A stretch of DNA of 64,000 nucleotides from Botryllus schlosseri (Eukaryota). Location: contig CM119372.1 of the NCBI GenBank assembly GCA_051294905.1, positions 2,418,001 to 2,482,000 on the forward strand. The letters run 5' to 3'. Under the pieces are notes generated by a model. It had not been told where the DNA came from, did no database searches, and saw nothing but the letters and a program-made list of their open reading frames with translations. The stretch's first letter is position 1. Each line of letters starts with the position of its first letter. This document shows positions 1-24,730 of this stretch, in pieces. The translations under genes were made by a program, and so were the position numbers.

Positions 1-61
1 AGGAGAGATCCAGACATGATAGCGAATCGCATATGATATAGACGTATGTGTTGTGCATATC

Positions 62-646
62 CAGAGTTGTAACCAAGCCATAAAGCTCCGAGTCACACGT
101 CAATCTCACTTTTATAGTTTTGACTCGAGTCAAGTCGAGTCATTTTCAATTCACTACCGAGTCAAGACTGAGTCCAAGTCATTGAGCAGAGGTTCGAGTC
201 CGAGTCATGATATTATGACTCGAGTCCGAGTCCAAGTCATTGTGTTGACTGCTCAGTTTCCACTTGAAAAGTCATGTTAAACCCACTTTTATAACTGTGT
301 TTGGTGATATCAAATGGTTCGCACTTATAAAATACTAATTTTCTTCATTTTTAATAGTTTCTAATCGCATTTTCCGGTACCAGTACCAATAGACGAAATC
401 CCAATAGGGTGGTTACTCTACTTTTCTTCGAAATTACAATGAAATGTCGGGCTTGGCCGTCTGAGTCTTGAGTCATATGACTTGGTTCGAGTCACGCGCA
501 ATGACTCGAGTCCAAGTCGAGTCAATACACAGATTGACTCGAGTCGAGTCGAGTCATTTCCGTATTTTGAGAAAATGACTCGAGTCAAGTCGAGACGTCA
601 AAAAATTGGACTCGAGTCTGACTTGAGTCGAGTCATTACAACCCTG
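62..646. mobile_element. Non-autonomous hAT-like MITE, GACTCGAGTC-rich family (copy 1 of 4)
   Basis: Termini CAGAGTTGTAA ... TTACAACCCTG. Perfect 8-bp TSD TGCATATC at 54-61 and 647-654. Both ends carry arrays of GACTC/GAGTC motifs. Confidence 0.9.
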
Positions 647-800
647 TGCATATCATGTGTATATGGTCAAGGATGAAGAATAAGATGTAACAGCAGCTAA
701 ATATTCCGAGATAGCAGGATTCCAATTTAACATGTTTATCTTTAGAATCGGACGCACTAAATTTGCATTTTGTAAAGGTATGGCAGCTTCAGTTGACTAC

Positions 801-3800
801 CTGGTTGCGTTGCAGCGGCTTCGGAAGTGGTTGTCTTTGAAGTCTGTAGTGTCCCTATTTAATCAAGATAACGCATATCAAACACTATTTTAGCAGATAC
901 AGCAAGGATATTCAAATTATTACCTGTTGTGACCATCTCATTGGTTGGTGTGATCATAGCTGACGCGGTGGACTGTATAATATCATCATTGCATAAATTT
1001 CCATCACAACAGCTTGATCGGCAATCGGTAAACGTTGCACCAGTTCCAACTATCGGCGCAACATCATCAAGCTGACGACATGGATCCATAGAGCATTGGA
1101 ATGCAGGAACACAATTGCCTTGCGTAACCTCAACTGTAAATACAAGAGAAATAAAATATGCATCATGATATGCAAACATGATAGTAGAATGTTAGCATTT
1201 ACCAGCAGTGGATCCTTCCGATTTGACAAATGTCAACTGACATTTTGAATTCGCTGGGCATTGAACGACAGATCTTGTGTTAGCAGTAAACATGTCATAT
1301 TCGGGCAAAAATGTCTTCATAATTGCGAAACATTGCAGGGGTTCTTCGACCAAGCCTTAAACAGATAATAGTCGTTTAGGAACTGAAATCAAATATGGTT
1401 ATTTGTACGGCTACAAAATTGTAATGTGCATCCTAAGCGTCGTCTACGGCACTGTTGTATATATAGTTGTTTTCGAATCAATTTTTTGATTCTCAAATGA
1501 ATGAAAATAGCTGTAATGTAAATGTAACAACTTGCGTGATTGCCGATCAGGTAATCGAAATCAAAAAAAGAGGATGTTCATACTCTTTTCTAACTGCAAA
1601 CATATCGCTTCACGTATCAAATGCTCTAACTAAGCCTCCAGGAAGAGAGTAAAGTCAATTCGGATCTAATGAATGAAGGTTAATCACAATTAGGGAAATA
1701 GCACATGAAATAGTTTAAAGTCAATGAATAAACAAGCTTTGTTATGCAAATATGCTACCCCACATGATAAGAGATTACTTGTCAATGTGATCATGGTAAA
1801 CTGGCGCACAATCCTATCTCCTGATCTGCATACAAATATAATGCTCGACTAACTCCGAATACGTCTTAGAATACTTACTTTTATTGACAGGAGTAAATGA
1901 TGTTGAGATTTGGAGGTCTCTGTTGTCATTACAAAGATTCGTCTCACAGTATTTGTAACCGCAAGATTCTACTGTCATATCAGCATTCGGGACAACGGTA
2001 AATGCAGAACTTATTGAATCGAATATTTCATTGCATCCGTAAGATCCCTTTGCAGCCTTCGGCAAACACGCACCATAGAGCGTGGTCACTGAAAAGGGAA
2101 AAAGGTCACTTTAACGCATCATTACAAATCTGCTTTGAGTAATTGAGAAGAAGCCAATTGGAGAATGAAGTGTTCAACTTCATTGTATGAATATTGCAAT
2201 ATCTTAATGGATGATTCCTGACAAATTATATTAATAGGAACTTTCTAAGACTATTATGTATGGCATTCCTGAGAATTGCAGAACATGTAATACAATCACT
2301 AGCTTGTCATTCTGGTTCATTTGAAATATAATGGAAAAACCTGGCAATATTTGATACACAAAGGTATCTATAGTGATCATAAGGCGGTAATCCGAGAGCA
2401 ATGATGCATACATACATATATACATGTAAGCATACAATACATACATATACAATATACATACTTGAATTTTTTCCGTCATTTCCCGTGATCTCTACAGTAC
2501 TGGTAATATTTGCAAAAAAGCAAACTGATTCATCGGGACAGGATTGCGTTCGATTGATATTCAGAACAATGCCAGGAACATCAGCAATTACGATCTGATA
2601 ACATTTCAGCGACTCTGAAATAGAATTACATGCATTTAAAGTCAGATTTCTTTTTCATTTCAGTAAACATTCAAGTAAAGTCTGTTTTTGAAATATATTT
2701 TACAAATTTAATCTACAATACATAATACTAGCCTATTACATCGAAAATTCAAGTTGGTGATTCCATGTCTTAGGGAGATTCATATCTTCAGTAACAAAAA
2801 TATTTCAATTGTATTCAGTATTGTAGACGTAAAAAGTAAATTGGGATAGTCTCCCCCCATTGGATGCTAACTGACTTTTATATGTGGTTTTCAGTACACG
2901 CATGTAACACTACTGTATTTGTTACAAATCTTGACTGTCTTGCAAAATTCAACCTGATATATACCCCAATGACAGACTCTTCTGCACTGCACAGACCAAG
3001 GCTATTGCATATTAACATTTTTTCTTAATCCAACATGAAAATATTTCCTCGCAAAATTTTCGGGCATTCAGTTGAATAAGGTAGCCAGTCTGATTAATAT
3101 TTGACAGATTGATGAAACGTTATTATGATTTCAATGACGTATCCCTTATAACATGGGTGGCTAACCTGCGGTCGTAGAAGGAAATTTTTTTGGCGGTCGA
3201 CACGTAATTCAACTAGTATGGCGGCAGTCAACACGCAAATTGAATTTACGAATTGACTACGGAATTTTTAAGAGACTTTACTTAATCTCAAAGTTTTCTT
3301 TGCGCTGGGCGCGATTCAATGCGACTTCATTTCTCGAGTTTAAAAAAGTAGCGATCATTGCTGATCAATTTATTAAATGACTGTAGCTCCTTTGCAACAT
3401 CAACAGAAAACAGCACGTTAGATTTTATGGTGTCATTGTAACGGATGTGGCTGATTTTTGCTCCCAGCTTGACTCTGTCTGGTTGCGTTTTTGACAGCGC
3501 AACCATAACATCATGAAATATATTTTTATATTCCAAAAATCCAAAATTTCAGAAAGTTCTGTATCGTGTGAATTTTTTGGAAGGTGTCCCGCGATCCTAA
3601 AAGACTGTCTGGCGGACCCCAAAAAGTACCCGACCCCAGTTTGAGAACCGCTTGATTTATAGTGTGCCCTAAATTTTTCAAAACACTCCCTCCATCAAAT
3701 CTACCGGAGAATCTGATCACGTGGGCTGTAAAAGGATAGATGTTTGATAGTAATATGTGAAACTACTAATATTAATGACGAAATTCAAACGTGAATCTGA

Positions 3801-6800
3801 AGAAAATCTTCACACTTATTGCAAACATACGGATTCCCAGTTGCTGTTCATAACATGACCACTCGCGATTTCGGTGCGTATAGTAAGCCGATATGAATAA
3901 ATAGATTAGTCTGGAATTCACCGGAAATGGACAGATTAACATGGTTATTTGGCGTCCAGTTAGTTCATTACGACTATGCCATGGAATGCGGCCATAGCCT
4001 ATACGAGTAATCGAAATGGGGCCTTGAATAGCACAAAGGTTGGCAACCCCTGCCTTACAAGAATTCTTGGCATTACGAAAATGATGAAAAACAGTCAAAT
4101 AGAAGTATAAATAAATATCTTGGTTGGGTCGTGGATATAGAAGGTTTCCTGCATTAAATGAATTGAAGTCCTACCTTTTGCTGGGGTGCGACTCAGAGCT
4201 TGTGTGAAAGCTAAAATATAAGTTCATTGTCAAATCCAAAATTCAATAAGACTATGAGTGGTGAGTATAGAAAGACTCAATTTGTTTCGAAAGATCATAT
4301 GATCCAGCAAGAGCAAAATGCTGATTAAATGATATTATGTATAAATGTCCATTATTGAAAAAAATAATATTTACCTGTTGTAATTTCAGTAACCATTGTC
4401 GAAGACTGAGTAGGTTGTGTGCGTTCTGTACATAAATATAATGCTGAACTTGATGACATGAATTGTGACTTATTTTAAACGAACTCTACACATTACCAGC
4501 AAGCTAATTCAAAATGGAATACGACATGATTGCCAATAAATATACAGGAATAGCCGGTTTCTGATTCGAGATGTTTATCTTGAGAATCTAATACAATGAC
4601 TTTGCATTTTGTAAATGTATGGCAGCTTTAGTAGACTACCTGGTTGCGTTGCAGCGGCTTCGGAAGTTGTTGTCTTTGAAGTCTGCTGTGTCTCTATTTA
4701 ATCAAGATAACGCATATTAAACACCATTTTTCAGCAGGTACAGCGAGGATATACAAATTATTACCTGTTGTCACTCTCTCATTGGTTAGTGTGATCATAG
4801 CCGATGTAGTGGACTGTATAATATCATCATTGCATAAATTCCCATCACAACAGCTTGATTGGCAATCGGTAAAAGTTGCATCTGTACCGACCATTGGTGC
4901 AACATCATCAAGCTGACTGCAGAGATCCATAGAGCATTGGAATTCGGGAACACAATTGCCTTGCGTAACCTCAACTGTAAATACAAAAGTAAAAAAAAAT
5001 ATGCATTATGAGCTACCAACATGACAGCATAATGTAAGCATTTACCTTTGACAGTTGTCCCAGCAGTGGACACTTGCGATTTAACAAACGTCAATTGACA
5101 TTTGGAATTTGCTGGGCACTGAATGACAGTTCTTGTGTCAGATGTAATCGTGCCATATTCAGGCAAAATTGTCTTTGTAATTGCGAAACATCGCAGTGGT
5201 TCTCCGACTGAGCCTTTAACAAATAATGCTAATTTAGGCACAGAAATCAAACATGGTTATTTGTACGGCTGCAAAAATTATGATGTGAATCCTAAGAATC
5301 GTCTTCAGCCGCGGCAAAGATATATTTCTCTTTTCAATTGAAGTTTTTGTTTCTCAAATGAATGAAATTGACTGTAATTTAAACGTAACAACTTGAACGG
5401 TTGCTGATCAGTTAATCGAAATCCAAAAAAGAGGATGTACAGTACACTCTGTTCTGACTGCAAACATATTGCTTCCAGTATTAAACACCTTAACCAAGAC
5501 TCCAAGAAGCAAGTAAAGTCAATTGCGATCCAATGAATGAAGGTTAATCACAATTAGGGGAATAGTACGGTAGATGAAATAGTTCAAAGTTCCAAGAATA
5601 TATAAGCTTTGCCGTGCAAATATGCCACCCTACATGATTGGAGATTACTTGTCAATGTGATGAGGTTAAACTGGAGCACAATCCTATCTCCTGATCTGCA
5701 TACCTATAGCATGCTCAACTAACTCCTAATATGCATAAAAAACACTTACTTTTATTGACAGGAGTATATGATGTTGAGATTTGGAGGTCCCTGTTGTCAT
5801 TGCAAAGATCTGTCTCACAGTATTTGTAACCGCAAGATTCTACTCTAATATCGGCATTCGGGACAACTGTAGTTGCAGAACTTATTGAATCAAATATTTC
5901 ATTGCATCCGTAGGCTCCCTTTGCAGCCTTTGGTAAACATGCACCATAGAGCGTGGTCACTGAAAAGGGAAAAAATCACTCCACCGCATCCTTACAAATT
6001 TGCTTTTGGTGATTGAGGACCAGCCAATTGCACAAAGAAGTATTCAACTTCATCATAATAATATTGCAATATCTTGATGATGACTTCCGAAAATTATATT
6101 AATGAGAACTTTTGAAGACTATGATGTATGGCATTCCTGAGAATTGGAGACCAAGTCACACAATCACTGGCTTGTCATTGTGCTTCATTTGAAATATAAT
6201 GGCGAGACCTGGCAATATTTGATACACAAAGGTATCTACAGTGTTCATAAGACGACGCAAAACCATGAGCAATGATGCATACATACCTATATACATATAA
6301 GCATACCATGCATACATATACAATATACATACATACATGTCAGTTAAACAAAATTATATTTACTTGTATTTTTCCCGTCATATCCCTCGATCTCTACAGA
6401 ACTGGTGATATTTGCAAAAAAGCAAACTGATTCATCGGGGCAGGATTGTGTCCGATTCATATTCAGAACAGTTCCATTGCCAGGAATACCGGCAATCATG
6501 ATTTGAAAACATTTCAGTGATTCTGAAATAGATTTTCATGCATTTAAAGTCAGATGTCCGTTTCATTTCAAATAAAGTCTGTTTTCGAAATATATTCCTG
6601 AAATTTAATCTATTGCCATAATATACTGGCTGTTACATCATAGATCTAAGCTAGTGATCCCAGGTCTTAGAGAGATTGATATGGTCAGTTCCAAAAATAA
6701 TTCAACTCCAATATATTTATTTAATATAGTATGGTTTAAAAAGTAAATTGGGATAGTCTCACACCCTAGGCTGCCGACTGACTTATATATGTAGTTTTCA

Positions 6801-9800
6801 GTACGTGCATGAAGCTCAACTGTATTTGTTACAAATATTGACTGTCATGCGAAATATAACCTGATATGTACTCCCAATGACAGACTCTTTCGTACTGCAT
6901 CTTGGGAACCACAGATCAAGGCTATTGCATAATAACATTTCCGCTCAATCCAACATAAAATTAATTCCTTGTAAGATTTTCAAGCATTCTGTTGACTAAG
7001 ATAGACGGTCTTATTAGGATTTGACAGATTGATAAACGATTATTATAATATCGATGAAGTATAAAGAAAGTATTCTTGGCATCAAGAAAATTAGCATAAT
7101 AGTCAAGTTGAATTAAAAATAAATATCTTGGTTTGGATCTTGGATATGGAAGGTTTCCTAAATTAAATGAATTGAAGTCCTACCTTTTGCTGAGGTGCGA
7201 TTCAGAGCTCGTGAGAAAGCTAAAACATAAGTTCAAGATGACTAAATTTGTTTTGCCGGATCATATGATCTGCCAGGAAGAAAATCCTGACTAAAATATT
7301 TACCTGTGGTAATTTCAGTAACCATTGTCGAAGATTGAGTAGGTTCTGTGCGCTCTGTATATGAATATAATGCTGAACTTTATGACATGAACTGCGACTT
7401 ACTTCAAGTGAACTCAAGACATTGCCAGCGAGCTAATTCAAAATGAAATATGAGAATATTGCCAATACCAAATCGGCTGCTGGCTTGCACAACACAGAAC
7501 ACGATTAACTTACTTCACACGCACTAATTTTAAAGGAAAGGGAAGCATCAATCACTGTACCTGATGATGTGGTCTGTATTTCTGTCGTAGATGCCGTTGT
7601 ACTGCGTGCGGTCACTATTCAAGGAAAGTAAATAGTTTATCAAATATAGATAAATAATGGTGGAACATCCGGCTTCTTGATCGGCACGCACTGGGTTTAA
7701 TCTCCGCCGGGTTCAAATCAAAGACAGGACTAGTAACACTGGTATCAATGGCTTCTCCACTTGGCGCTCAGCATTACCGGCATTGGGGGGTGGTGCAAGA
7801 CTTAGAAAGTCTTACAAGGCTATTTCTGCATCTTCCTTGTCCAGAGGCATATGCACTTCATGCACTCATGGTATGCATATGCACAGATCGTGTGTTTGTA
7901 TATCATGAGTCGGTGTATATGCCGCAAAAACATCAAGGACAAAAAATATGATGTACTATTCTTAGCAATCATTTACAGTAGACGCGAATATTTGCAAATG
8001 TCCAAACTGCAACGTTGCGATAGAGTAGGGGTTCTCAAACGGTGGGCCATGGTCCACTGGTGGGCCACAGGAGTAATTTGATGTGGTCACAGAGCTATTT
8101 GGAAAATTGTGGAATTAGTGAAAATTTAGTTATATTCTTTATGTTCATATATTCAAAAACGTATTCATGTTATCGAATTATGCGAATGCTACATAAAGGT
8201 TATCATCCGACTCTGATGAGACTTGGTGGCAAGTATGGAGTCACAATGTACAAGTCGAAATGGGAGGGGAAACTGCGGCCGGTAATTGTATAATGATTAG
8301 CGATCGTTATGTCATGATTGCTCAAAAGTGACATCGCAAAACAGAATGACATCGTATACTAAAACTCAACTATTCATGTACTGCGAATGCAGGATGCGTA
8401 CTATACATGGGTACAGGCTTTTCCCCAGAATTTCCATGCCATTTCAAGGGTGCGTATTATACATGGGAGCGTACTATACTTGTAAAATTACGGTAGATCC
8501 TGGTTATCATTGCTTGACAATGATAGTTTTCAATGAGCGAACCTCATTACTTCACAAGGATAGGAATAGAATGTTGTATATTTTTCTCTTTGATGTTTTT
8601 GCAGCATATACACCGAGTCATGATATACACACACACACGACTGTGCATATGCATATGCCATGAGTGCATGATGCGTATATGCTGTTGGAAGGAAGGTGAA
8701 GAAATAGTCTTGTTAGGCTTTCTAAATCCTTCAACACAGTTCCATGCTATCCCAGTTGTGCTGAACACCAAGCAGGGAGGCCATGAATACCAGTGTTATT
8801 AATCAGGCCTTCGGTCTGACCCGGCTGGGGATTGAACCCACGACCTACCGATCAAGAAGACGGACGTTCCGCCATTGCGCTATCTTGTTGGTTGGTCACA
8901 AATACGAGTCTTACCTTGTGTAGTGGTATCTGTACTGGGTGTCGAAGACGTTGCGGTAGTCCCACTTCTCCTGGCCCGTGCTGCAAACATATCATTTCTA
9001 AACCTTTCTGCCCATTAACACCATTTGTGTGCGATTACCATATCTGTATCGAGCTGAAAATCCACTCATTTCGCCACCGGCTTGCGCAATGAATCTTATC
9101 GTGAAGCCTCTTCGAGCAGATGAAATAAATTCCTTCCTGATGTCTGGCACGTCTCCGAATATAACAGAGGAATACTCATACACCAACACCGAGCCGTCGT
9201 AGATCTGAGAATTGATAAATGGGAATGATATGCGAGATTTTTCGGTTATATTACTTTACATTAGTGGTTCTTAGCCTGAGTTTCGTAAAGGCAAAGACAC
9301 ACACTTGACTCATACAGCAGGAATCAAACTGATTTACTGTAAATATTCGTTATCATAGTTTTGTGTGAAAATCATGTCCCAAGGGTTGTGTTCTTGTACC
9401 AATGCTGTGCACAACCTCCTTTTGTGCCATATTTAGGAGAGAGGAGGCCAAGATGAGACACTTTTCTGATAATCCAATGCCACTCGAAGAGTAATGCCTT
9501 CTGAGGATTAATTTTGGTACCAATGGAAAGCCTGTGATCTGTACTTTCTATGACGATGGCTTGAGTTATATTGAACAACATACTGATGGATTTCTTGGCC
9601 CTCAAAAATCCTTGCAAAAATGTCTCAACTTACCCCCAGGTGAGGGTAAGATGAGACACACTGTGTTCAAGATGAGACACCAAGCAATTCATGCTCATTA
9701 CACCACCAATTCATCCCAAATGATGAACCAACTAGCAACATCGTGAATAAAATATAATAATCATGAAATAATTCACTTTTAAAAAGAACTTGTACATCAT

Positions 9801-15800: not shown

Positions 15801-18800
15801 ATGTGATAGCAACCTTGAAATCCCCAGAAACGGCTCTTAGATATTCCGCCCACAAATTATTATTTCGTCATTTTGTTGACCAGTGTAATCAATTCACTGC
15901 TGTAAGCAATCTAAAATGTCTCTAATGACTCCCGCTACTTTACTTGTTTGAAACGTCTTTCTGAGAGTGAATTATTTATTACAATGGCTATACAAAGCAG
16001 TTAAACAGTAGTATAATAAGCGATTGGCTATAGTGCTTCTAATTCTTCGGATAATACATGATTTAATTCCGCCTGGTCAACAGGTATAAACTTCTTTCTC
16101 AATACCGTTCTATATGCCGCTTTGATGTCGAATCATACCTGAGAAAATGCTTTCACAAATGGGTGAATTACCAAAAATGAATCAGGTATCACAACATTTC
16201 TAACAGAATCTTTTGTAAATCCTAATTTTTGCAACGTCATTGGAAGAATGTCATTTTTATGTCAAGAATGTAAGCGTGTTAATTAATGGACCTTTTGGGT
16301 GCATTTAAGAGAACGTAAGTGTCTCGACTTCAGGCAGTGGCTCTCAAATTATGATACGCATACCACTAGTGGTATCAGTGAAGCGCTTACTTGGCAATCT
16401 TTGTGTTATGGCAGGTGCAGTCGTTGCCACTTCATCTATACAGGTAAGTGAAAATGTTATTTCATTACACATTGCATAGGCAAACTAGACTATGTTTGTT
16501 ACCTGTGTAGTAGCTCGCTTGAAAACCTTTTAACCCATAATGCTCCACACTGGTAAAAACCACCTTTAATTGATCAGTATTGGAAACATATACTTGATTT
16601 TCAATCAGCTCACTCTCTGGCACAAGGGCCTCCCCGTCATAAACCTATTGGCAAGAAAAATACTTTACAAATAGGTTATTCGGGATAATTAGACATACCA
16701 TATTAATTATTGGGTTTAGATGTCTGGCAACAAAACATGAATATTTTCAGTAGCAAAGTCTGCATTCCTACCTACATTATAATCCCAGTATATTTTGCCC
16801 ACACTCATCTACTATAATTAAAAGTGATATATGTACCTTGAGAGAGTCTTTTCCCTGAGTTGTCTCCAGTGTCGTAAACACAAGATATATTTTTGCTCCT
16901 TTAACTTGGCTTCTGATACTCCAAGTGCAATTTAACTCTCCCTTGTATAACAATTTAGGATAACTAGGACTCTGGATGTTCTTGATGGTATTGCTAGCAG
17001 TGACTTCAGAACCACATGACGCTGTAAATTTATTAATAATATTAAAGTTATTAAACCTTGCATGAAAATTAGCGTGATTAACTGATTGGACACAAACTTC
17101 TTAATCTTCTGCTAAGATCAATTTTTTATATGCTCTATCTCCAGAAAACAGTGAAGTATGCTGTCTTTTCATCGAACATACTGAATATTTCTGTCAAGTT
17201 GGGAACAAAAATTTACCTATCTTAAATATGAAAGTTACTAGAGCAATCGCAGCAAATTGAACTTTTTTTATTTAGGATCATGGTAAGTGCAAATTGTCCG
17301 CAACAAAATCAGTATTATCGTTTGTTATGTTTTATGGTTATTCAAAACACATATCTCTGTAGTAAATTCTACTAGTATGGGTGAATGAAAGTCAACACAG
17401 CAATCCACAGGAAAATTAATTAGATTATAAAGGTAAGTTTATAAAATCTGTTCATGCTAAAATAAAAAAAAATAGGAGTGGAATCGACTATTACTGAAAA
17501 AGGGTTACCATATTTGGAGATGCGAAAAGGATGGCATTTTTATGAGTCACAAAAGATGAAATATCATTTTCATTATTACGGGATGATTGCAAATTTTACT
17601 GATATTAATGGGTTGACTAAAAAAAGGTCCCGTTTCCGACTCTACTACCGAAAAACCCATCTCCACATACAACGGGTTGGAGCTTGAAGGTTGTCTAAAA
17701 AAGGTCATTGAGTTTCACGTCGAAATTCAGATTTCTATCTGTACGATTGCCTTCATCTCAAAGGTATAAAGGAGAACGAATAACGAAAAAGGAAGACATT
17801 TGAACGTTGTCGGAGAACATTTAAGATTTCGTGAAAAAGAAGAACTAATCTTCAGGACATATGGTAACCCTAACTGAATGCACATTGCACAAGCTATGCA
17901 TTGCCGTCACATTGCACACACACAAACACACATTATGTGCAGGGCGTTCGCTTTTGTAATGAATTACCTGGGACCGCGTAGTACAGTATCATAAATGACG
18001 AATCATCATTATCTGATCTGTATCTAATTCCACCCAGATTGCTGTCAAACGTGTACTCAAACCCTGCACGGTCTTCGCTCAATTGTAAAAGAACTTTGGC
18101 AGTGTCCCAGTCGACTTTCGGCCTCTTTACCTCAAGAAGCTGTGATAGCGGAAGGTCACATAAATATTGTAAAAGGAGGCACCTGATCAATAGCAAAAAT
18201 TAATATTAAATAAGGCTCTTGATATACTTGACATGAAGAGGGCTGAATACAATGATCTGAGTACTGAAATTATAGGCCCCTTACCACTGACAGTTAACTT
18301 ATTTACCAGGATTATAGTTTAGATGCGTTTTCCCTATGCCGAGGAAGCTTTGAAACTTCGATTGGCCATATCACACCGTACAATACATGTATTACAAAGG
18401 CGCGCATATTAGAGCAAATGTCATTTCTGTGTAGTCACGATCAGCCTATCACATCATTGAGAAGTGAAATGAAATTATTATGGCCGAAAAAGTGGCAAAT
18501 TATATTTTAATGGGGTGTGGAACTAGCATTATTTTCTTACTCGGATACTCGACACAAAGACTAATGATATAAGTTTAGGTTTGAAATTACAAAACGAAAG
18601 AGATCCACTTTTCAAAGACAAATTTATAGCTATTTATGGGTCAAACTTACCTCGAAAGTTGCGGAATCCGGAACAACATTGAAATCAATAAAGACTAATT
18701 TGACCAAGAAGTTTTGTGGGGCAAACAGACGCCACCTGCATTCCCGGGAGTATCTATACGGTGATTGAAGGAAGTAGTATTGTCCAACTAGTACACGCTT

Positions 18801-21800
18801 TCCTGTGCCACCGCAACTTCGTCTTCTACCTGAATAGGGATGTAAAATGATCAGACTCTTGAAGGAACGTGACTTCAGTATACAATTGAATAATATATTC
18901 ATTGAAATAAACCGGTGTATGTTTGGCTGACACTCGTCAGTGCTAATTATCAGCAACGTGAGGACGCAGATATCGTCGAAATAAATCCATTCAAGACTGG
19001 AAACTAATGAAGTGACTGAATCGGTGCTAGTTCTTCTTACCCGGCGGCAAAGTATACAGTGGAGGCTCTGTTGTTGTGTCTGTAAAATTAAACTTGGTCT
19101 AAAAGCAGCTAAAGCACAAAGCACAAAGAATGCGTTATTTTAAAAGGTAGGACAGTTACCCAACATTTGAGCATGCGACACTATGGACAGTATGTGACTT
19201 TACAAACTCAAAACTATTTCTATCCCTGAAATTAATCTCAAGTATAACCATATAATCCAACCATAAACCTAACTTTAAGACAGAAACTTAGGTGTCACAT
19301 GCTAATATTGCATACTCAAGTGTCTACGGACCAGTAACGGGTGTCAATGCTTTGGAGCAGGTTAACAATTGCAGAGAACAATATTGCAATAACTCAGTTA
19401 CATCTTAGACTTGATGCGTACACATATGTAATACACATTATGTGGTAACTTATGCTCTTAGTATGTTCTGCTAATGCGGAAGTAAAGGTAGTACCTGTAG
19501 TTACGGGTGCAGTGGTTGGAGCAAATGGATTTTCTGAAAATATAAAATAAAAACATGTTCATTGAATGTTTGGTTAAAATCGCTCTATGTAATAGTTTTA
19601 TATATTCGGTCATCATCATCTACAAATGCTGTACTATCAATGTGGTCGGTTGCTGGATTCTGCACAAGATGAAAATTGCCAAACCTATTAGCTGGGTTAC
19701 AACCAATTCACAAGATCCCGAGCAACAAGTCAATTAGACTTTTATTGTTTTGACTCGAGTCAAGTCGCGTCATTTTCAATTCAGCACCGAGTCCGAGTCA
19801 TAGTGTTAAGACTTAAGTCCTAGTCCTAATCATTACGTTTACTGTTAATAATCAGGTTCAAGTCAGGTTCAACTCACTTCTGTGAAATTTTGGGGTGATA
19901 TCGAAAATCTCGGATTCATAATATACTCACTTTTCTCACTCTAAACATGTTTATTCTAGGCTTATTTTTCAATTATCAGTCCTGATATATCAGATTTGAA
20001 TCGGTCATATAGAATGTATCGAGTCATATGACTTGGCCGAGTCTTGAGCAATGACTCGAGTACAAGTCGAGTCAATACAGAAATTGGCTTGAGTCGAGTT
20101 AACGAAAAATTGCGACGACTCGAGTCATTACAACCCTGCCTATTTGCCAATACATTGCAAAGTTCCAGTATATTAAAATCTGAATCAAGTCACAATATCT
20201 CAAAGCAGTCGGAATTGATCTTACTTGCAATATAATTTGCCCTAAATCCTCGCATCGGCATTAACCCATATGAGTTGTAAGTGATTCGTAGCATGCCGCC
20301 AGTTCTTGATACAAAGGTGTCTCTGGTTGATGATCTCAAGGTAACCGTACGTTGACCATCATCGCTTTCAATACCTTCGATCTGCATATGGAAAGGAGAG
20401 ATTTAACATGTATTATCACAAATTAAATACTATCATGCATATTGATGTTATATTATTGACTTTGACATGCATCAACTTCCCCTGTATTGTGCCTTCTCAT
20501 TGCCTTCCTATTTTAAACTCGGTGAATGTGCAAATATGTATGCCACTTTTAGTCCCCCCCACCCCCCCCCCCCCCCTTAGAAAGTCTTACAATGCTATAT
20601 CTGCACCTTCTTTGTTCATGGGCATATGCACATCATGCACTCATGGTATATATATGCGGTATGTACAGATCGAGTGTATGTCTATAATGAGTCGGTGTAT
20701 ATCCTGCAAAAACATCAAGGACAAAAATATACGTCCTACTTTTAAGCTACATTAACAGGGCAGGATAGATGTGTGTTTGATTGATTGATTTCACCAAGTC
20801 ATTTTGACTCCTTCTGTCTAGTTCATTGTGTTGTATTTCAAACATTGGTTTGTCCAGCATGAAATACTAGTATATTGAATGATAATGATCGCACTACCTC
20901 ATTCAGAACCCGAGCACCGAAATGAGTACCATAAGTCCTAATGAGATCGATACCATTGCGGAATTTAGATTAACTCACCACAATACTATCACAGCAAGCA
21001 GTTATCTCGATGCTGAAAAACGACAGTTCAACTCGTAGTCCTTCAGGAGCGCTGATGTACCACGAGCATTGGATTGACAGCATGGTAGCTGATGGCCACT
21101 GCGGTGATAATAGCGTTTGCAGTGATGAGGTTGCTACCAAATTTGTGAGGCCGCATTCTGAAAAATGTACAGTTACAGTTTCGGTTGCATTTTAAGCAAA
21201 TGGTGTTTTGAAACACTTTATTTAAAACAAGTTTCAAACAGTGTTTTAAAAAATTGCCTTTAAGTAAAATGTTTTTTTTTTCAAACGCCGCTTAATTATG
21301 CCATAATTGTGGTAATACTTTCGAAAAAACATGTAGTGTATGAGTCTAATGACGATTTGCACCTGATAGGGTCAACGGATACGATATGGAGCCGTTGGAA
21401 CCCACGAAATCGTCGCCAATTCTACAATTCTAGCACGTAGATATAGATCAATGGTACAGAATGGGTGTTCTGATGATGACTGCCGACCTTAAAAATGCTG
21501 CATTACTATTTAGTCCCGCTTAGAGATCTTTTTGTTTCGTTTATGACAGTGTCCGGAAGCCTTTTTCGTCACAGGACCAATATTTACCCTATATTTTCAA
21601 TTGTTGATTTCAATCCAATGTCACGTCACAACTAAAAATTCGTGACGTCATGTCGAAAAAAAGCAGCACACACAAAAAAAACACTTGTTCCATTCTAGGA
21701 TTGAGGCGGGCGCGTGATTTTTCTATCCTGTTTTTGATAAATGCTGGTAACGTCTTTTTTGCGATACAAATCGCAAAAAAAAAACAGTAAAACACGTTTT

Positions 21801-22633
21801 AAACAAGGGCCATGTTTTAAACATGTTTGTTTTTAATGCAATCCTAGTTACAGGAAATGAAACTCTACTGAGTCAACCCAAAGAACCACTTCTCCGGCTC
21901 TCCTTATTATCTATTTCTACATTTCATTACTTTAACAACTGTACATTGCATAGGCTACAAACCCAAATTATGATTTCACATTATATTGTTACTAAATTTA
22001 AATCTTCAAACCTTTTGTGAATTGTTTTTAGATACTTGATGCATTTTGATTGAAGTTAAAACAAGCTGTAAGCAAGAGTTTATGGATTGTTTTAGTATGC
22101 CTATCTCATTATAATTTTACTGATGAGCTAATATTAGAACAGCATAACATAGTGGTGTACAAAATAAGTCACACAAAGCAAAATTTTGTAGTCAGAAATA
22201 AAGTTTTATCAGACATCTTGTGCACTGCATTGGGAAATATTATCGGACACTCAAACATTTGCATATTTCATAGCTCTGTCCTGCTTTACATATGTAACGG
22301 ATCAGAAAGATACCATATTTCATCATGTGTAACTAATCAACGAAGGTATTATTGCTACATGGCTATGGGCACATGGCTAATTTGGTCACACTTACCGTAT
22401 ACCGTAATTGACCTGCTAATGATAAGCTATACATTTGAAGAAAATATGTAATATTAGGGAAATTTACCGAATTACCAATCACAATAAGAATCACGATTGA
22501 TGTGGTACATCTTAGGAAATTTTCCATTACACATATTACTTATATATAGATATATGACTGAGCATAATACCTTGTGGTTGTGCTTCTATAGGCTCGGAAG
22601 TCGATATCACTGGAGTCCGCTGTGTGGTTGATA
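801..22633 (-). CDS. Gene A: multi-exon extracellular mosaic protein, 5x CUB + RARR site + S/T-rich linkers + 4x LU (Ly6/uPAR); 5' and 3' ends not resolved
   Basis: 29 GT-AG exons in continuous phase, listed 5' to 3': 22633-22571, 21157-20979, 20381-20225, 19533-19495, 18829-18651, 18139-17968, 17021-16837, 16644-16503, 16435-16391, 14327-14152, 12285-12108, 11460-11285, 9204-9039, 8980-8915, 7614-7561, 7372-7304, 7219-7184, 6522-6364, 5959-5750, 5213-5046, 4974-4765, 4693-4640, 4443-4375, 4210-4175, 2614-2462, 2088-1879, 1355-1203, 1133-924, 854-801. Total 3768 nt with no internal stop. Domain boundaries are phase-1 introns. Confidence 0.85.
924..1355 (-). CDS. Gene A LU domain 4 (exons 1355-1203 and 1133-924)
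   Basis: LVEEPLQCFAIMK...QCPANSKCQ... | VEVTQGNCVPAFQCSMDPC...DCRSSCCDGNLCN. Ten Cys and the terminal CCxxxxCN signature of LU domains. Confidence 0.9.
1879..2614 (-). CDS. Gene A LU domain 3 (exons 2614-2462 and 2088-1879)
   Basis: ESLKCYQIV...QSCPDESVCFF... | MTTLYGACLPK...GCNE...SCGYKYCETNLCN. Eight Cys and a terminal CxxxxCN. Confidence 0.85.
3152..4052. mobile_element. hAT-like non-autonomous element present only in the left duplicated unit
   Basis: Termini CATGGGTGGCTAACCT ... AGGTTGGCAACCCCTG. TSD CCTTATAA / CCTTACAA. Absent at the homologous intron position near 7060. A second internal end (GTTTGAGAACCGCTTG) lies near 3654. Confidence 0.75.
4175..4693 (-). CDS. Gene A S/T-rich linker exons between the two LU pairs (4693-4640, 4443-4375, 4210-4175)
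   Basis: ETQQTSKTTTSEAAATQP | ALYLCTERTQPTQSSTMVTEITT | AFTQALSRTPAK. All are phase 1-1 exons with canonical splice sites. Confidence 0.8.
4765..5213 (-). CDS. Gene A LU domain 2 (exons 5213-5046 and 4974-4765)
   Basis: SVGEPLRCFAITK...QCPANSKCQ... | VEVTQGNCVPEFQCSMDLC...DCQSSCCDGNLCN. Paralogous to LU4. Confidence 0.9.
5750..6522 (-). CDS. Gene A LU domain 1 (exons 6522-6364 and 5959-5750)
   Basis: ESLKCFQIM...QSCPDESVCFF... | MTTLYGACLPK...SCGYKYCETDLCN. Paralogous to LU3. Confidence 0.85.
7184..8980 (-). CDS. Gene A mucin-like linker exons (8980-8915, 7614-7561, 7372-7304, 7219-7184), including the RARR motif
   Basis: ARARRSGTTATSSTPSTDTTTQ | VTARSTTASTTEIQTTSS | ALYSYTERTEPTQSSTMVTEITT | AFSRALNRTSAK. 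All are phase 1-1 exons. Confidence 0.8.
7649..7950 (+). mobile_element. tRNA-derived SINE (degenerate copy)
   Basis: Aligns along its length with the reverse complement of 8576-8884: head, central CTGGTAT...CTTGGCGCTCAGCA block, and 3' part ending CATCAAGGACAAAAAATAT. Confidence 0.7.
8576..8884 (-). mobile_element. tRNA-derived SINE
   Basis: The reverse strand begins GATAGCGCAATGGCGG (pol III A-box-like) ... GGGTTCAATCCC (B-box-like), followed by a non-tRNA body shared with 7649-7950 and 20577-20740. Confidence 0.8.
9039..11460 (-). CDS. Gene A CUB domain 5 (exons 11460-11285 and 9204-9039)
   Basis: GSCGFTDF...LKSPGYPRRYPEKMDCTWTI...DDKVQ | IYDGSV...GFTIRF...SGFSARY. Canonical CUB motifs. 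Confidence 0.9.
9434..10394. mobile_element. MITE with TAGG(G)AGAG termini; superfamily uncertain (Tc1/mariner-pogo-like?)
   Basis: Inverted ends TAGGAGAGAGGAGGCCAAGATGAGACAC and GTGTCTCATCTTGGACTCCTCTCCCCTA. The AAGATGAGACA motif recurs internally in both orientations. Confidence 0.75.
10958..11200. repeat. Degenerate array of AAAACTAG/AACTAG motifs, probably one end of a MITE
   Basis: Many copies of AAAACTAGAA and TTTTCAAAACTAG within about 240 bp. Confidence 0.55.
12108..14327 (-). CDS. Gene A CUB domain 4, atypical (exons 14327-14152 and 12285-12108)
   Basis: GRPNTCGKVLRRV...LRSPRREKNCRWRL...IKLTFLEYELDP... | LVDIRGFRFQWDT...GGIIYESG...SIQYEAY. Alignable with CUB2. Confidence 0.75.
12335..13625. 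mobile_element. GACTCGAGTC-family MITE (degenerate copy 2), interrupted by a nested element
   Basis: Left end CAGGGTTGTAACC at 12335. The family sequence resumes after 13342. The right terminus is eroded, so the end coordinate is approximate. Confidence 0.7.
12476..13342. mobile_element. Nested MITE with TAGGGC-type termini and TTTTGAC subterminal repeats
   Basis: Ends TGGGCGATTTTT ... AAAACAGCCCTA. Flanks TTATAACT / TTATTACT (7 of 8 match). It splits the host MITE. Confidence 0.65.
14960..16110 (-). pseudogene. Fossil Chapaev3-like (CMC superfamily) transposase in an intron of gene A
   Basis: Minus-strand translation across stops and frameshifts gives DQAELNHVL, KSGIFDGSQIR, HFLFSHLDIF, KGERFHQYIK and IIADYCWNL. 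These match the order of motifs I recall for Chapaev3 transposases (ELNDL, GIFDGPQIR, HSHLD, GERFHQDI, ADYCW). Boundaries are approximate. Confidence 0.75.
16391..17021 (-). CDS. Gene A CUB domain 3 plus linker (exons 17021-16837, 16644-16503, 16435-16391)
   Basis: SCGSEVTAS...IQSPSYPK...LNCTWSI...DSLK | VYDGE...LKVVFTS...KGFQASY | EVATTAPAITQRLP. Confidence 0.9.
17501..17872. mobile_element. MITE of the TAGGGTTACCATA group
   Basis: Ends AGGGTTACCATA ... TATGGTAACCCTA. Flanks ACTGAAAA / ACTGAATG. Confidence 0.7.
17968..19533 (-). CDS. Gene A linker plus CUB domain 2, atypical (exons 19533-19495, 18829-18651, 18139-17968)
   Basis: NPFAPTTAPVTT | GRRRSCGGTG...LQSPYRYSRECRWRL...VKLVFIDFNV... 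| LLEVKRPKVDWDT...GGIRYRSD...FMILYYAVP. Confidence 0.8.
19692..20138. mobile_element. GACTCGAGTC-family MITE (copy 3)
   Basis: Ends CTGGGTTACAAC ... TTACAACCCTG. TSD CCTATTAG / CCTATTTG. Confidence 0.85.
20225..21157 (-). CDS. Gene A CUB domain 1 (exons 21157-20979 and 20381-20225)
   Basis: ECGLTNLVA...LLSPQWPS...QCSWYISAPEGLRVELSF...CCDSIV | IEG...LRITYNS...RGFRANY. Confidence 0.9.
20577..20740 (+). mobile_element. 3' fragment of the tRNA-derived SINE family
   Basis: TTAGAAAGTCTTACAATGCTAT...CATCAAGGACAAAAATATA matches 7801-7950. Confidence 0.75.
21180..21846. mobile_element. MITE of the TAGGGTTGCATTTAAAAC group
   Basis: Ends TTCGGTTGCATTTTAAG ... TTTAATGCAATCCTA. TSD GTTACAGT / GTTACAGG. 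Shares terminal blocks with 32247-32676 and 59306-59729. Confidence 0.75.
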
Positions 22634-23397: not shown

Positions 23398-24730
23398 CTG
23401 TAAGAAATAAAACTCGATAAAGTTTCTTTGCATCAACTTGAGCACGATTATCGACAGCTAGACTTATGCAAATCGGAATTCATATAATTATTATCAACTA
23501 TCTTCGATGACACAAACATTAATCCGTGATGATAATCTGCAGGATATTGAACGATAGCCATTTCACAACAGGAGGGGAATGCTGCAGCGCCCAAACTAAT
23601 GTGGTATCAAGGTCAATTGGGTTCAAGAAGGGATTGCTGACTGTTACATCATAACAATCCTAACACGCTTCCATCCATGTTATTGTTTAATTTGTACACT
23701 TGCACGATATACAATTATCATGTTGCCTGTACGCCACAACGGTACCTTGCAATAATGCATAAGCCAAACTGAATGACGATCTTGCCTACCATTCGTATAA
23801 TACTGCGTGACAGCTGTAAATATGATGCATATCACGAAACAAATCATATGCCACCATCATTATGATTTCGATGTTATTCTGTTCTTGACTTTTGATGTCG
23901 CCCCACCAGAGGTTATGAAGCGGTCAGTGGTCCATGGCTTGTGATGATATTTTACATCACGCCATGGCCTAGTACTAGTATAGTAGGGCATTACCGAAGC
24001 TATGTTTAAATCCACGCCTGAATAATTGCTTAATACGTGTGACTGCAAATTCACTTGGATCATAGCAGTTGCTTTGGCATAACTCACTTCGAATGAGATT
24101 GCGTGGGCACATGGGCCTGAGCAATAGTGACCATGCAACTTAAACGCAAAGTGAGATACCGGTAGGCCTACAATATTGCACAGTCAGTGACTTTCATCGT
24201 TGGTAAATGTTATGCACTACAATTACGAAGTGGCGGCAATATTTGAATTGACTGGAATCAATCGATCGAAAGCTACTCCGGTACCAGTTCCGAAACTAAA
24301 AATTTTATCCGGCTCACACGCGGTCCTGGAACCTGGAACCCACCAAAAACCAGCTCGGATTTCGCATGGTGACGGAGGTGGGCATTGCGATGTGACGCAA
24401 CAATGTCGCCTGGAATTACCATGCCGCACTCAGGAACTTAAGTGAGCATTGAGCAACACCGAGAGTGAGAGTGCTCAATAGGCGGCGCGGCATTGATATC
24501 TATTACAATTATGAGCTTGGAAAAACTAACACTGCAAAATCACAAGATTTAATAATGAAATTGGATAGCATTACGGATGTGGAGGAAAAATCTAGTGACA
24601 TTAGTAGTGAAATCGTTCGGAACCCAATTGTGGAACAGCATCTCGCCGGCCATCCGACAGTCGTCGAGGATGTCTGCATTCAAGTCAAAATACAAGCAAT
24701 TACTTCTCTAAATGAATACTAGTCAGCCTT

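What the first reader, a model, noticed from the sequence alone, without database searches (positions are those of the whole stretch)
801..22633. Large mosaic protein combining five CUB domains with four Ly6/uPAR domains
Seen: 29 in-phase exons link the CUB region to the LU region with no stop, so the short LU-like ORFs in the track are not separate genes. Established: CUB domains mediate extracellular protein recognition (complement C1r/s, spermadhesins, cubilin), and LU domains are usually found alone or as pure tandem arrays (CD59, uPAR, CD177). Inference: a CUB-plus-LU fusion is unusual and suggests a lineage-specific recognition protein, for example in innate immunity, gamete interaction or allorecognition.
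Basis: partly seen in the sequence, partly recalled or inferred. Interest (0 to 1): 0.7.

Follow-up and report, generated by a model that had tools for sequence, protein, structure and literature searches.

The report
Sea-squirt CUB plus Ly6/uPAR mosaic gene
This is a real, transcribed sea-squirt gene for a large surface protein that joins five CUB binding modules to an array of Ly6/uPAR "three-finger" modules, a combination that reviews of the Ly6/uPAR family do not list. Related sea-squirt genes sit in databases only as "uncharacterized protein".

Summary
The gene lies on the minus strand. Spliced RNA contigs from two or three independent studies join the last CUB exon (9204-9039) through four small Ser/Thr-rich exons to the first LU exon (6522), then run on through LU1, LU2 and three more linker exons into LU3. 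All junctions are GT..AG.

My model has 30 coding exons, 1359 aa and no internal stop. It reads: signal peptide, 5 CUB, mucin-like spacer, LU pair, spacer, LU pair, spacer, then a fifth LU that lies just left of the window and ends in a hydrophobic GPI-type tail. So there are five LU domains, not four.

The layout is not unique. Styela clava has three predicted CUB+LU genes, and this genome has a second CUB+LU locus on another chromosome. No paper describing them was found.

The LU fold was shown by proxy. A model of a Styela LU pair matches uPAR, CD177, C4.4A and TEX101, and our LU pairs fit the Styela profile at about E 1e-50.

Selection looks purifying: 19 synonymous against 6 non-synonymous differences, and dN/dS 0.24 between the internal duplicates. 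This gives no support for an allorecognition-type role. Function is unknown.

The gene sits at the head of a same-strand CUB, LU, kringle locus of about 113 kb, collinear with one giant Styela model.

The parts
23790..23847 (-). Candidate alternative first coding exon. It has an ATG and a signal-peptide-like start (MICFVICIIFTAVTQ...) and ends at a phase-1 donor.
   Evidence: Sequence scan only. No RNA evidence.
22571..22633 (-). Candidate 63-nt Ser/Thr/Pro-rich exon with phase 1 on both sides.
   Evidence: AG..GT flanks, open frame, and the same style as the confirmed linker exons. No RNA evidence.
22476..22527 (-). Candidate first coding exon. It has an ATG and a hydrophobic signal-peptide-like start (MENFLRCTTSIVILIVI) and ends at a phase-1 donor.
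   Evidence: Predicted only; it competes with the 23847 exon.
20979..21157 (-). CUB1, N-terminal half exon
   Evidence: Pfam CUB 30.7 bits, E 4e-7. Splice prediction. tblastn to Styela P0001 residues 349-414.
20225..20381 (-). CUB1, C-terminal half exon
   Evidence: The Styela CUB HMM covers model residues 18-131 end to end, i-E 9e-27.
19495..19533 (-). 39-nt Thr/Pro-rich linker exon between CUB1 and CUB2 (predicted)
   Evidence: In-phase AG..GT exon.
18651..18829 (-). CUB2, N-terminal half exon
   Evidence: Pfam CUB 18.3 bits, below the cut-off. tblastn to P0001 residues 513-572, E 1e-8.
17968..18139 (-). CUB2, C-terminal half exon
   Evidence: Styela CUB HMM hit on model residues 162-256, i-E 1e-9.
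16837..17021 (-). CUB3, N-terminal half exon
   Evidence: Pfam CUB 31.2 bits.
16503..16644 (-). CUB3, C-terminal half exon
   Evidence: Styela CUB HMM hit on model residues 261-369, i-E 1e-23.
14152..14327 (-). CUB4, N-terminal half exon
   Evidence: Pfam CUB 19.7 bits, below the cut-off. tblastn to P0001, E 5e-11.
12108..12285 (-). CUB4, C-terminal half exon (divergent)
   Evidence: In-phase splice prediction. The CUB HMM covers only residues 374-447, that is mostly the N half.
11285..11460 (-). CUB5, N-terminal half exon
   Evidence: Pfam CUB 37.7 bits. Its 3' end is joined to 9204 in an X7 contig: the loose end at 9207 matches 11288-11317.
9039..9204 (-). CUB5, C-terminal half exon
   Evidence: RNA contigs of X1, X2 and X7. 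Joint 9039>8980.
8915..8980 (-). Linker exon 1 (66 nt, Ser/Thr-rich)
   Evidence: Joints 9039>8980 and 8915>7614 in X1 and X7.
7561..7614 (-). Linker exon 2 (54 nt, Ser/Thr-rich)
   Evidence: Joints in X1 and X7.
7304..7354 (-). Linker exon 3 (51 nt, Ser/Thr-rich)
   Evidence: Joints in X1 and X7.
7184..7219 (-). Linker exon 4 (36 nt)
   Evidence: Joints 7304>7219 and 7184>6522 in X1 and X7.
6364..6522 (-). LU1 (8-Cys type A), N-terminal half exon
   Evidence: Joints. Styela LU-pair HMM hit on model residues 672-897, i-E 5e-50.
5750..5959 (-). LU1, C-terminal half exon (ends ...YCETDLCN)
   Evidence: Joints 6364>5959 (X2, X7) and 5750>5213 (X1, X7).
5046..5213 (-). LU2 (10-Cys type B), N-terminal half exon
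   Evidence: Joints.
4765..4974 (-). LU2, C-terminal half exon (CCDGNLCN). Reading through its donor gives a relic hydrophobic tail.
   Evidence: Joints. Pfam UPAR_LY6_2 17 bits, below the cut-off. Tail analysis.
4640..4693 (-). Linker exon 5 (54 nt)
   Evidence: Joints 4765>4693 and 4640>4425 in X7.
4375..4425 (-). Linker exon 6 (51 nt)
   Evidence: Joints in X7 and X2.
4175..4210 (-). Linker exon 7 (36 nt)
   Evidence: Joint 4375>4210. Its 3' end joins an LU N-half exon that was laid 'back' at 6469, which I read as LU3.
2462..2614 (-). LU3 (type A), N-terminal half exon; a duplicate of LU1
   Evidence: About 84% identical DNA copy of the LU1 N-half exon. Conserved splice sites.
1879..2088 (-). 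LU3, C-terminal half exon
   Evidence: 92% identical copy of 5750-5959.
1203..1355 (-). LU4 (type B), N-terminal half exon, with a 15-nt in-frame deletion relative to LU2
924..1133 (-). LU4, C-terminal half exon
   Evidence: 89% identical copy of 4765-4974. Pfam UPAR_LY6_2 17 bits. LU-pair HMM hit on model residues 968-1186, i-E 4e-49.
801..854 (-). Linker exon 8 (54 nt), the last exon inside the window. The next exons, LU5, lie outside at L007 9329-9165 and 9095-8857.
   Evidence: Copy of 4640-4693 with 4 differences in 54. An X7 contig joins this exon, or its twin, exactly to L007 9329.

Best explanation
This is one protein-coding gene of an ascidian (sea squirt) on the minus strand. Its product of about 1360 residues enters the secretory pathway.

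From the outside in, the protein has a head of five CUB domains and then a heavily Ser/Thr-rich, mucin-like spacer that is presumably O-glycosylated. Next come two pairs of LU (three-finger) domains, each pair made of an 8-Cys 'type A' and a 10-Cys 'type B' module, with further mucin-like spacers between and after the pairs. A fifth, type B LU domain follows, and its exon runs on into a hydrophobic C-terminal tail of the kind that is exchanged for a GPI anchor.

The most likely working model is a GPI-tethered, non-signalling, multivalent extracellular binding protein acting as an adhesion or co-receptor scaffold. The LU array sits near the membrane and the CUB array is held out on glycosylated stalks.

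What is shown: the exon chain CUB5 > linkers > LU1 > LU2 > linkers > LU3 and linker > LU5; the domain identities; conservation of the layout in another ascidian; and purifying selection. What is inferred: the exons upstream of CUB5, the signal peptide, the GPI anchor, glycosylation, and the binding or scaffold function.
For: RNA:
- GT..AG joints in contigs of X1, X7 and partly X2 link CUB5 to LU1 and run on to LU3.
- Introns have zero depth, and two contigs bridge the CUB-LU link.
- A loose end maps exactly to the LU5 exon start.

Coding:
- The model has 30 exons and 4080 nt with no internal stop.
- Every exon from 8980 onward is a multiple of 3 with phase-1 borders.
- Differences between individuals are 19 synonymous to 6 non-synonymous.
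- LU1-2 against LU3-4 gives dN/dS 0.24.

Domains:
- Pfam CUB hits and five CUB hits in the spliced model.
- LU pairs match the Styela LU-pair profile at 5e-50 and 4e-49, and LU5 at 8e-19.
- The AlphaFold model of that Styela pair (pLDDT 79) hits uPAR, CD177, C4.4A and TEX101 at probability 0.95-1.0.
- Language-model neighbours are TGF-beta-receptor ectodomain, uPAR/Ly6 and toxin-like clusters.

Conservation:
- Styela clava LOC120343914 has 5 CUB, a mucin region and 22 alternating A/B LU domains. It aligns to CUB1-3 at 32% identity, E 1e-60, and to the LU region at E 1e-60.
- LOC120344751 and LOC120344849 are also CUB+LU.
- A collinear second locus lies on C16 of this genome.

Tail: the LU5 exon ends ...LCN plus about 10 residues, then a 16-residue hydrophobic stretch (mean hydropathy 2.65) and a stop, with poly(A) signal motifs 98 and 410 nt downstream.
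Against: - No RNA evidence was obtained for exons upstream of CUB5. There are two competing first exons.
- The end of the gene is not pinned down. The LU5 C-half exon carries the family's usual phase-1 donor (LLTG|gtaatt). Two good in-phase Ser/Thr linker exons and further LU modules follow on the same strand. The Styela model runs on into kringles and a VWA domain.
- Pfam's own LU models do not reach threshold on the half-domain exons.
- A sequence profile of type B LU domains (mostly Styela) found no significant PDB match.
- The LU fold was modelled on the Styela homologue, not on this protein.
- No GPI or signal-peptide predictor was available.
- One bulk RNA-seq run (X17) shows no reads on the exons, so expression is restricted, and the tissue is unknown.
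Confidence: 0.62

Rival explanations
1. What is described here is only the 5' part, or one isoform, of a much larger transcription unit of about 113 kb: CUB x5, then about 17 LU modules, then about 9 kringles, as in the 4811-aa Styela clava model. LU C-half exons either splice onward from a conserved donor or read through into a hydrophobic tail. This would give GPI-anchored isoforms of different lengths.
For: - CUB, LU and kringle exons lie in that order on the minus strand from C2:2,439,173 down to 2,326,413, collinear with Styela LOC120343914.
- That Styela gene is annotated with at least 26 isoforms.
- Every type B LU C-half exon has a phase-1 donor at the same place.
- Read-through tails are strongly hydrophobic after LU5 and after another LU 8.5 kb further on. 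They are decayed after the internal LU2 and LU4.
- Two strong phase 1-1 Ser/Thr exons (L007 8109-8062 and 8004-7945) and a canonical phase-1 acceptor at the next LU follow LU5.
- An X7 contig may join linker 5 directly to LU5, skipping the second LU pair.
Against: - No RNA evidence beyond the LU5 N-half exon was obtained.
- The next LU exon also carries an in-frame ATG and a signal-peptide-like start (L007 about 6575), as expected of a separate gene.
- The Styela giant is an automatic model that could merge neighbouring genes.
- No VWA exon was detected in the locus.
Confidence: 0.28
2. The CUB-LU link is read-through or chimeric splicing between two separate genes: a CUB gene, and the first gene of a tandem LU cluster. 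It would not be a true fusion gene.
For: - The LU modules belong to a same-strand tandem LU cluster.
- Relic GPI-type tails after LU2 and LU4 suggest that these modules descend from free-standing GPI-anchored LU genes.
- Contigs across two genes do not prove one transcript (caveat printed).
Against: - There is no stop codon, signal peptide or start codon between CUB5 and LU1.
- Four dedicated in-phase linker exons connect them.
- The junction-spanning contig is the deepest one in X7 (191), and the junctions are seen in two studies.
- The same CUB-mucin-LU order is conserved in three Styela genes and in the C16 paralogue.
Confidence: 0.05
3. One reading: a fast-diversifying recognition protein for allorecognition, gamete recognition or innate immunity.
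For: - CUB and LU are both extracellular binding modules.
- LU proteins such as Bouncer mediate species-specific fertilization (10.1101/354688, listed).
- The family seems limited to ascidians and its module number has changed by tandem duplication.
Against: - Differences between individuals are mostly synonymous (19:6).
- dN/dS is 0.24 between the duplicated LU pairs.
- No expression site is known.
- Allele divergence of 3-5% in exons is not informative on its own. From my own knowledge, ascidians are generally highly heterozygous.
Confidence: 0.1

Closest known systems
Styela clava LOC120343914 (XP_039268896, 'uncharacterized protein', 4811 aa) and LOC120344751 / LOC120344849
   Same: - Signal peptide, five CUB domains, a mucin-like spacer, then alternating 8-Cys (..FCETNLCN) and 10-Cys (..CCDSNLCN) LU modules.
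- It aligns to our CUB1-3 at 32% identity, E 1e-60, and to the LU region at E 1e-60.
- The genomic order CUB > LU > kringle is shared.
   Different: - The Styela model has 22 LU modules and continues into 7 kringles and a VWA domain in one polypeptide. Our transcript evidence reaches five LU modules, and the fifth ends in a GPI-type tail.
- LOC120344751/849 and our C16 paralogue end right after the last ..LCN, so they are probably secreted.
Multi-LU GPI-anchored receptors of vertebrates: uPAR (3 LU), CD177 (4 LU), C4.4A/LYPD3 and TEX101 (2 LU)
   Same: - Tandem three-finger domains. These are the best structural matches of the family's LU pair.
- Two exons per LU domain with phase-1 borders (PMC6600238).
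- A Ser/Thr-rich stalk as in C4.4A (from my own knowledge), and a C-terminal hydrophobic GPI-type signal.
   Different: - Those proteins contain LU domains only. Here five CUB domains precede the LU array.
- Sequence similarity is too low for Pfam LU models or a PDB sequence profile to reach significance.
- Neither LU type has the Cys-x-x-Cys at the start that is typical of Ly6/uPAR domains. This comes from my reading of the cysteine spacing and is an inference.
CUB-array mosaic proteins (cubilin, CSMD, C1r/C1s/MASP, neuropilin, CDCP1)
   Same: Tandem CUB domains, each with the first conserved disulfide and each split into two exons, act as the presumed ligand-binding head.
   Different: As far as I know, none of these combines CUB with LU modules. 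No large Atlas cluster (clusters of 50 or more members) near the Styela CUB+LU protein P0009 carries an LU-family Pfam domain.
LU domains in non-LU contexts listed in reviews: GPIHBP1, SP-10, TGF-beta/activin/BMP receptor ectodomains; and Kunitz-, C1q-, fibrinogen-, Ig- and GPCR-linked LU proteins of invertebrates
   Same: An LU module is placed next to unrelated modules (PMC6600238, PMC13719153).
   Different: Neither source lists a CUB partner (or, in Styela, kringle and VWA partners), and tunicates were not surveyed.

Membership tests
Ly6/uPAR (LU) three-finger domain superfamily | Three-finger beta fold | tested here: met
   Tested by proxy. The AlphaFold model of a Styela A-B LU pair (pLDDT 79) has uPAR, CD177, C4.4A and TEX101 as its top PDB hits, probability 0.95-1.0, E 6e-5 to 1e-3. 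Our LU1-2, LU3-4 and LU5 fit that pair's profile at 5e-50, 4e-49 and 8e-19. Our own domains could not be folded because each is split by an intron.
Ly6/uPAR (LU) three-finger domain superfamily | 8-10 cysteines in a fixed framework ending in C(C)xxxxCN | tested here: met
   LU1 and LU3 have 8 Cys and end ..YCET[DN]LCN. LU2, LU4 and LU5 have 10 Cys and end ..CCDGNLCN.
Ly6/uPAR (LU) three-finger domain superfamily | Each domain encoded by two exons flanked by phase-1 introns (PMC6600238) | tested here: met
   Exon borders come from RNA joints. All LU exons are multiples of 3 with phase 1 on both sides.
Ly6/uPAR (LU) three-finger domain superfamily | Match to the curated Pfam LU models above threshold | tested here: not met
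   The LU2 and LU4 C-half exons score 17 bits on UPAR_LY6_2 against a cut-off of 31.5. Styela P0001 has no LU-family hit at E<=0.01, and P0006 scores 19 bits on Activin_recp against 20.9. A PDB sequence profile gave only BMPR2 ectodomain at E about 1. Whole spliced domains could not be submitted by reference.
Ly6/uPAR (LU) three-finger domain superfamily | GPI-anchor signal at the C-terminus (common but not obligatory) | tested here: inconclusive
   The LU5 exon ends with small residues, then a 16-residue hydrophobic stretch (hydropathy 2.65) and 4 more residues before the stop. No GPI predictor or experiment was available.
CUB domain (PF00431) | Match to Pfam CUB above the gathering score | tested here: met
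   The N-half exons of CUB1, CUB3 and CUB5 score 30.7, 31.2 and 37.7 bits against 21.4. CUB2 and CUB4 score 18.3 and 19.7, below the cut-off.
CUB domain (PF00431) | Complete domain of about 110 residues, with both halves present | tested here: met
   An HMM of the five Styela CUBs covers positions 1-112 of 114 in CUB1, 1-111 in CUB3 and 1-109 in CUB5. It covers 14-109 in CUB2 and only 2-79 in CUB4.
uPAR/CD177/C4.4A-type receptors (proteins made of LU domains only) | Ectodomain composed solely of LU domains | tested here: not met
   Five CUB domains precede the LU array in the same spliced transcript.
Ascidian CUB-mucin-LU family (Styela LOC120343914 type) | Collinear CUB array, mucin spacer and alternating type A / type B LU pairs | tested here: met
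   blastp at E 1e-60 on both the CUB and LU parts. The same A/B alternation is present. The locus is collinear, including downstream kringles.

The most novel reading that the evidence does not exclude
The whole same-strand stretch of about 113 kb (five CUB, about 17 LU modules, about 9 kringles) may be one modular transcription unit. All modules have phase-1 borders. LU C-half exons carry a choice between splicing onward and reading through into a GPI-anchor signal. Some LU exons double as first exons with their own signal peptide. One locus would then produce a graded set of anchored and secreted CUB/LU/kringle proteins, in line with the 26 or more isoforms annotated in Styela. It would also show how tandem GPI-anchored LU genes were welded into a mosaic gene by turning their GPI signals into introns.
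Probability: 0.28. Interest if true: 0.72.

Novelty: new variant of a known kind. Interest (0 to 1): 0.5.

Why it matters
Reviews of the Ly6/uPAR family treat the LU domain as a 'proto-module' that almost never mixes with other extracellular modules, even though its phase-1 exon borders should let it do so (PMC6600238). Here, in the closest invertebrate relatives of vertebrates, LU modules are spliced in-frame to classical shuffled modules: CUB in this gene, and kringle and VWA in the Styela model. The arrangement has been kept in at least two species and two paralogous loci.

The locus also preserves what look like intermediate steps of that fusion. These are relic GPI-signal sequences sitting in introns just after the splice donors of internal LU exons. 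That makes the evolutionary route testable.

If the GPI-anchored form is confirmed, the protein is a new kind of large surface scaffold in ascidians, and its ligands are worth finding. No function has been shown, and the selection pattern is ordinary.

Tried and rejected
- Pfam on single LU exons gave only sub-threshold hits.
- A sequence profile of 16 type B LU domains against PDB gave nothing significant; the best full-length match was BMPR2 ectodomain at E about 1.
- A word-index protein search with the LU5 C-half exon found no candidate, so the 3' end could not be checked through database transcripts.
- Raw bulk RNA-seq run X17 gave no reads on any exon. All its laid reads were partial matches to intronic repeats.
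- tRNA and Rfam scans of the very deeply covered intronic pieces (7832-7945, 8826-8866) found nothing. They belong to a dispersed repeat.
- A search for further CUB exons upstream of 21173, using tblastn with Styela proteins at E up to 10, found none in the window. The two extra N-terminal CUBs of the Styela protein have no counterpart here.
- Paper searches for the Styela locus names, and for CUB + Ly6 + ascidian, found nothing relevant.
- A protein-atlas search with the Styela CUB+LU protein returned only CUB-family or unannotated clusters, none with an LU-family domain.
- Whether the X7 contig that joins a 54-nt linker exon to LU5 comes from exon 4693-4640 (which would mean the second LU pair is skipped) or from exon 854-801 could not be decided. 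The two exons differ at only 4 of 54 bases.
- Earlier notes of this scan on other CUB genes of this genome do not concern this locus.
Full report
**What is in the sequence**

The region has about 36-40% G+C and contains no N. All coding signal lies on the minus strand.

Stop-to-stop ORFs show ten pieces that pair up as N- and C-halves of five CUB domains between 21191 and 9001. Eight further pieces pair up as halves of four cysteine-rich domains ending in C(C)xxxLCN between 6535 and 862.

The five CUB N-half exons hit Pfam CUB. Three score above the gathering score and two just below. The LU pieces give only sub-threshold hits to a Pfam LU model (UPAR_LY6_2, 17 bits).

The LU region is a tandem duplication of about 3.85 kb. 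Window 678-2662 matches 4517-6570 at 79-92% identity.

**The CUB-LU link is transcribed**

I laid three contig-type runs from three studies and one raw bulk RNA-seq run on window 3450-9449. In X1, X2 and X7 only the predicted exons have depth and the introns read zero.

Contigs carry these joints, all CT..AC on the plus strand, which is GT..AG on the minus strand:
- 9039>8980, 8915>7614, 7561>7354, 7304>7219 and 7184>6522, each seen in X1 and X7.
- 6364>5959, 5750>5213, 5046>4974, 4765>4693, 4640>4425 and 4375>4210.
- From 4175, a joint into an LU N-half exon that was laid 'back' on its paralogue at 6469. This is LU3, which lay outside the stretch.

X1 record 6 (1432 nt) and X7 record 18 (659 nt) each span from CUB5 to LU1. 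The 207 nt between their two laid pieces equal the four linker exons (66+54+51+36).

The loose end at 9207 matches 11288-11317, so the junction inside CUB5 is also seen.

**Gene model**

I combined the RNA joints with in-phase GT..AG predictions for the upstream part. This gives 30 coding exons, 4080 nt and 1359 aa with no internal stop.

The order is:
- a signal-peptide-like exon;
- CUB1;
- a 39-nt Thr/Pro exon;
- CUB2 to CUB5;
- four Ser/Thr-rich exons;
- LU1 and LU2;
- three linker exons;
- LU3 and LU4;
- one linker exon (854-801);
- LU5.

LU5 lies left of the window, at L007 9329-9165 and 9095-8857, which is C2:2,417,329-2,416,857. The link to it is direct. The 30 letters next to a 255-letter loose end of an X7 contig at 4640 match L007 9300-9329 exactly, ending at an AG acceptor.

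Every exon from 8980 on is a multiple of three with phase-1 borders.

The LU5 C-half exon runs past ..CCDGNLCN into about 10 residues and then a 16-residue hydrophobic stretch (mean hydropathy 2.65). Four more residues and a stop follow, with ATTAAA and AATAAA motifs 98 and 410 nt downstream. I read this as a GPI-attachment signal, which is an inference.

The 5' end is unsettled. Two signal-peptide-like first exons are possible, at 22527 and at 23847. All of these are compatible with the phase-1 acceptor of CUB1. No further CUB exon lies upstream in the window.

**Is it coding and under constraint?**

Of the 25 best-supported differences between the reference and the RNA contigs, 19 are synonymous and 6 are not. 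This confirms the frame and indicates purifying selection.

The internal duplicates (LU1-LU2-linker against LU3-LU4-linker) differ at dS 0.33 and dN 0.078, giving a ratio of 0.24. Their introns differ by 0.18. Both copies are therefore kept as coding sequence.

**Are the cysteine-rich domains LU domains?**

A full search of 1.84 billion representative proteins with the LU2 C-half exon gave only seven hits. The best is Styela clava LOC120343914 isoform X26, 4811 aa. LOC120344751 is also among them.

The Styela giant has a signal peptide, five CUB domains and a 240-residue mucin-like stretch. These are followed by 22 LU-like modules that alternate between an 8-Cys type (..FCETNLCN) and a 10-Cys type (..CCDSNLCN). 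Seven kringles and a VWA domain complete it. Our LU1 and LU3 are of the first type. LU2, LU4 and LU5 are of the second.

Evidence for the fold:
- An AlphaFold model of one Styela pair, built with nine paralogous pairs as the alignment, reached pLDDT 79.
- Its best PDB matches are all multi-LU receptors: uPAR, CD177, C4.4A and TEX101 (probability 0.95-1.0).
- Language-model neighbours are the TGF-beta receptor ectodomain, uPAR/Ly6 and toxin-like clusters.
- A profile of those Styela pairs hits our LU1-2 at 5e-50, LU3-4 at 4e-49 and LU5 at 8e-19.

A plain sequence profile against PDB was not significant. The LU assignment therefore rests on four things: the fold by proxy, the cysteine framework, the C-terminal motif, and the two-exon phase-1 gene structure that PMC6600238 gives as typical of LU genes.

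**Conservation of the layout**

Our model aligns to the Styela giant over CUB1-3 (32% identity, E 1e-60) and over the LU array (E 1e-60). It aligns collinearly to LOC120344751. A third Styela gene, LOC120344849, has the same layout.

This genome has a second collinear CUB+LU locus on C16:13,353,163-13,368,394. Its last LU ends right after ..LCN, as in the Styela proteins, so that branch is probably secreted.

The fusion is therefore older than the split of the two species and has been kept in two paralogous lines.

**Surroundings**

LU C-half exons like LU2's occur at least 11 times on C2 between 2,334,259 and 2,422,972, all on the minus strand. Kringle exons follow between 2,326,407 and 2,364,732 on the same strand.

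A tblastn map of the Styela giant on 126 kb shows the same order, CUB > LU > kringle.

All type B LU C-half exons share a phase-1 donor about 12-21 codons after ..LCN. Reading through it gives the following:
- strongly hydrophobic tails after LU5 and after another LU 8.5 kb further on;
- partly decayed hydrophobic tails after the internal LU2 and LU4.

I read the decayed tails as relics of GPI signals of once free-standing LU genes.

After LU5 come two good phase 1-1 Ser/Thr exons, and the next LU exon follows them. That exon has both a canonical phase-1 acceptor and an in-frame ATG with a signal-peptide-like start.

The gene may therefore continue in some isoforms, or the next gene may start there. 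I have no RNA evidence for either.

**Comparison with what is known, and function**

PMC6600238 states that LU domains occur alone, in pure LU arrays, or in a few foreign contexts (GPIHBP1, SP-10, TGF-beta receptors), and calls LU a 'proto-module'. PMC13719153 adds Kunitz, C1q, fibrinogen-like, Ig, GPCR and other partners in invertebrates. It has no CUB partner and no tunicate data. The Atlas search with the Styela protein P0009 returned no cluster carrying an LU-family domain. No paper mentions the Styela loci.

The most likely working model is a GPI-tethered, heavily glycosylated binding scaffold, with a distal CUB head and a membrane-proximal LU array. This follows from the general roles of these modules and is not tested here.

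The organism is an ascidian.

Noticed in passing
window 52-650: A repeat of about 590 bp is present in very many copies across all chromosomes at about 90% identity. The 40 scored candidates out of 4893 all matched. It looks like a MITE or SINE-type element, and it lies just downstream of exon 854-801.
   Followed up: partly
window 7748-8081, 8328-8802, 20408-20755: A dispersed repeat sits in three introns of the gene. Short parts of it (7832-7945, 8826-8866) reach depths of thousands in all RNA runs. The reads run on into unrelated sequence and poly(A), so they come from copies elsewhere. No tRNA or Rfam match was found.
   Followed up: partly
L007 and L006 (C2:2,398,001-2,418,000), L014-L015: A same-strand tandem cluster of at least a dozen further two-exon LU modules. 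At least one has its own ATG and signal-peptide-like start (L007 about 6575). One has a strongly hydrophobic GPI-type tail (L007 about 420-313).
   Followed up: partly
C2:2,326,407-2,364,732 (L008-L012): An array of about nine kringle domains lies on the same strand, with an LU exon among them at 2,334,259. This mirrors the kringle-LU-kringle tail of the Styela giant protein. No VWA exon was detected.
   Followed up: partly
C16:13,353,163-13,371,977 (L017-L019): A second CUB+LU locus with two CUB and about six LU modules on the minus strand. It is collinear with Styela LOC120344751/LOC120344849. Its last LU ends directly after ..LCN, with no hydrophobic tail. A further LU exon lies about 3.4 kb beyond its CUB exons, at 13,371,765-13,371,977.
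   Followed up: partly
window 4697-4764 and 862-923: Intron sequence just after the LU2 and LU4 donors reads in frame as a partly decayed hydrophobic tail ending in a stop. I take this as a likely relic of GPI signals from ancestral stand-alone LU genes.
   Followed up: partly
window 4765-5213: RNA contigs from other individuals differ from the reference by 4-5% in the LU2 exons, almost all at synonymous sites. Two junction variants with a few replaced letters (4692>4777 and 4972>5048) look like divergent alleles.
   Followed up: partly
window 3650-4049: Another intronic stretch has high depth in the RNA contig runs (up to 990 in X2) and loose ends on both sides. It is probably a transcribed repeat.
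   Followed up: no
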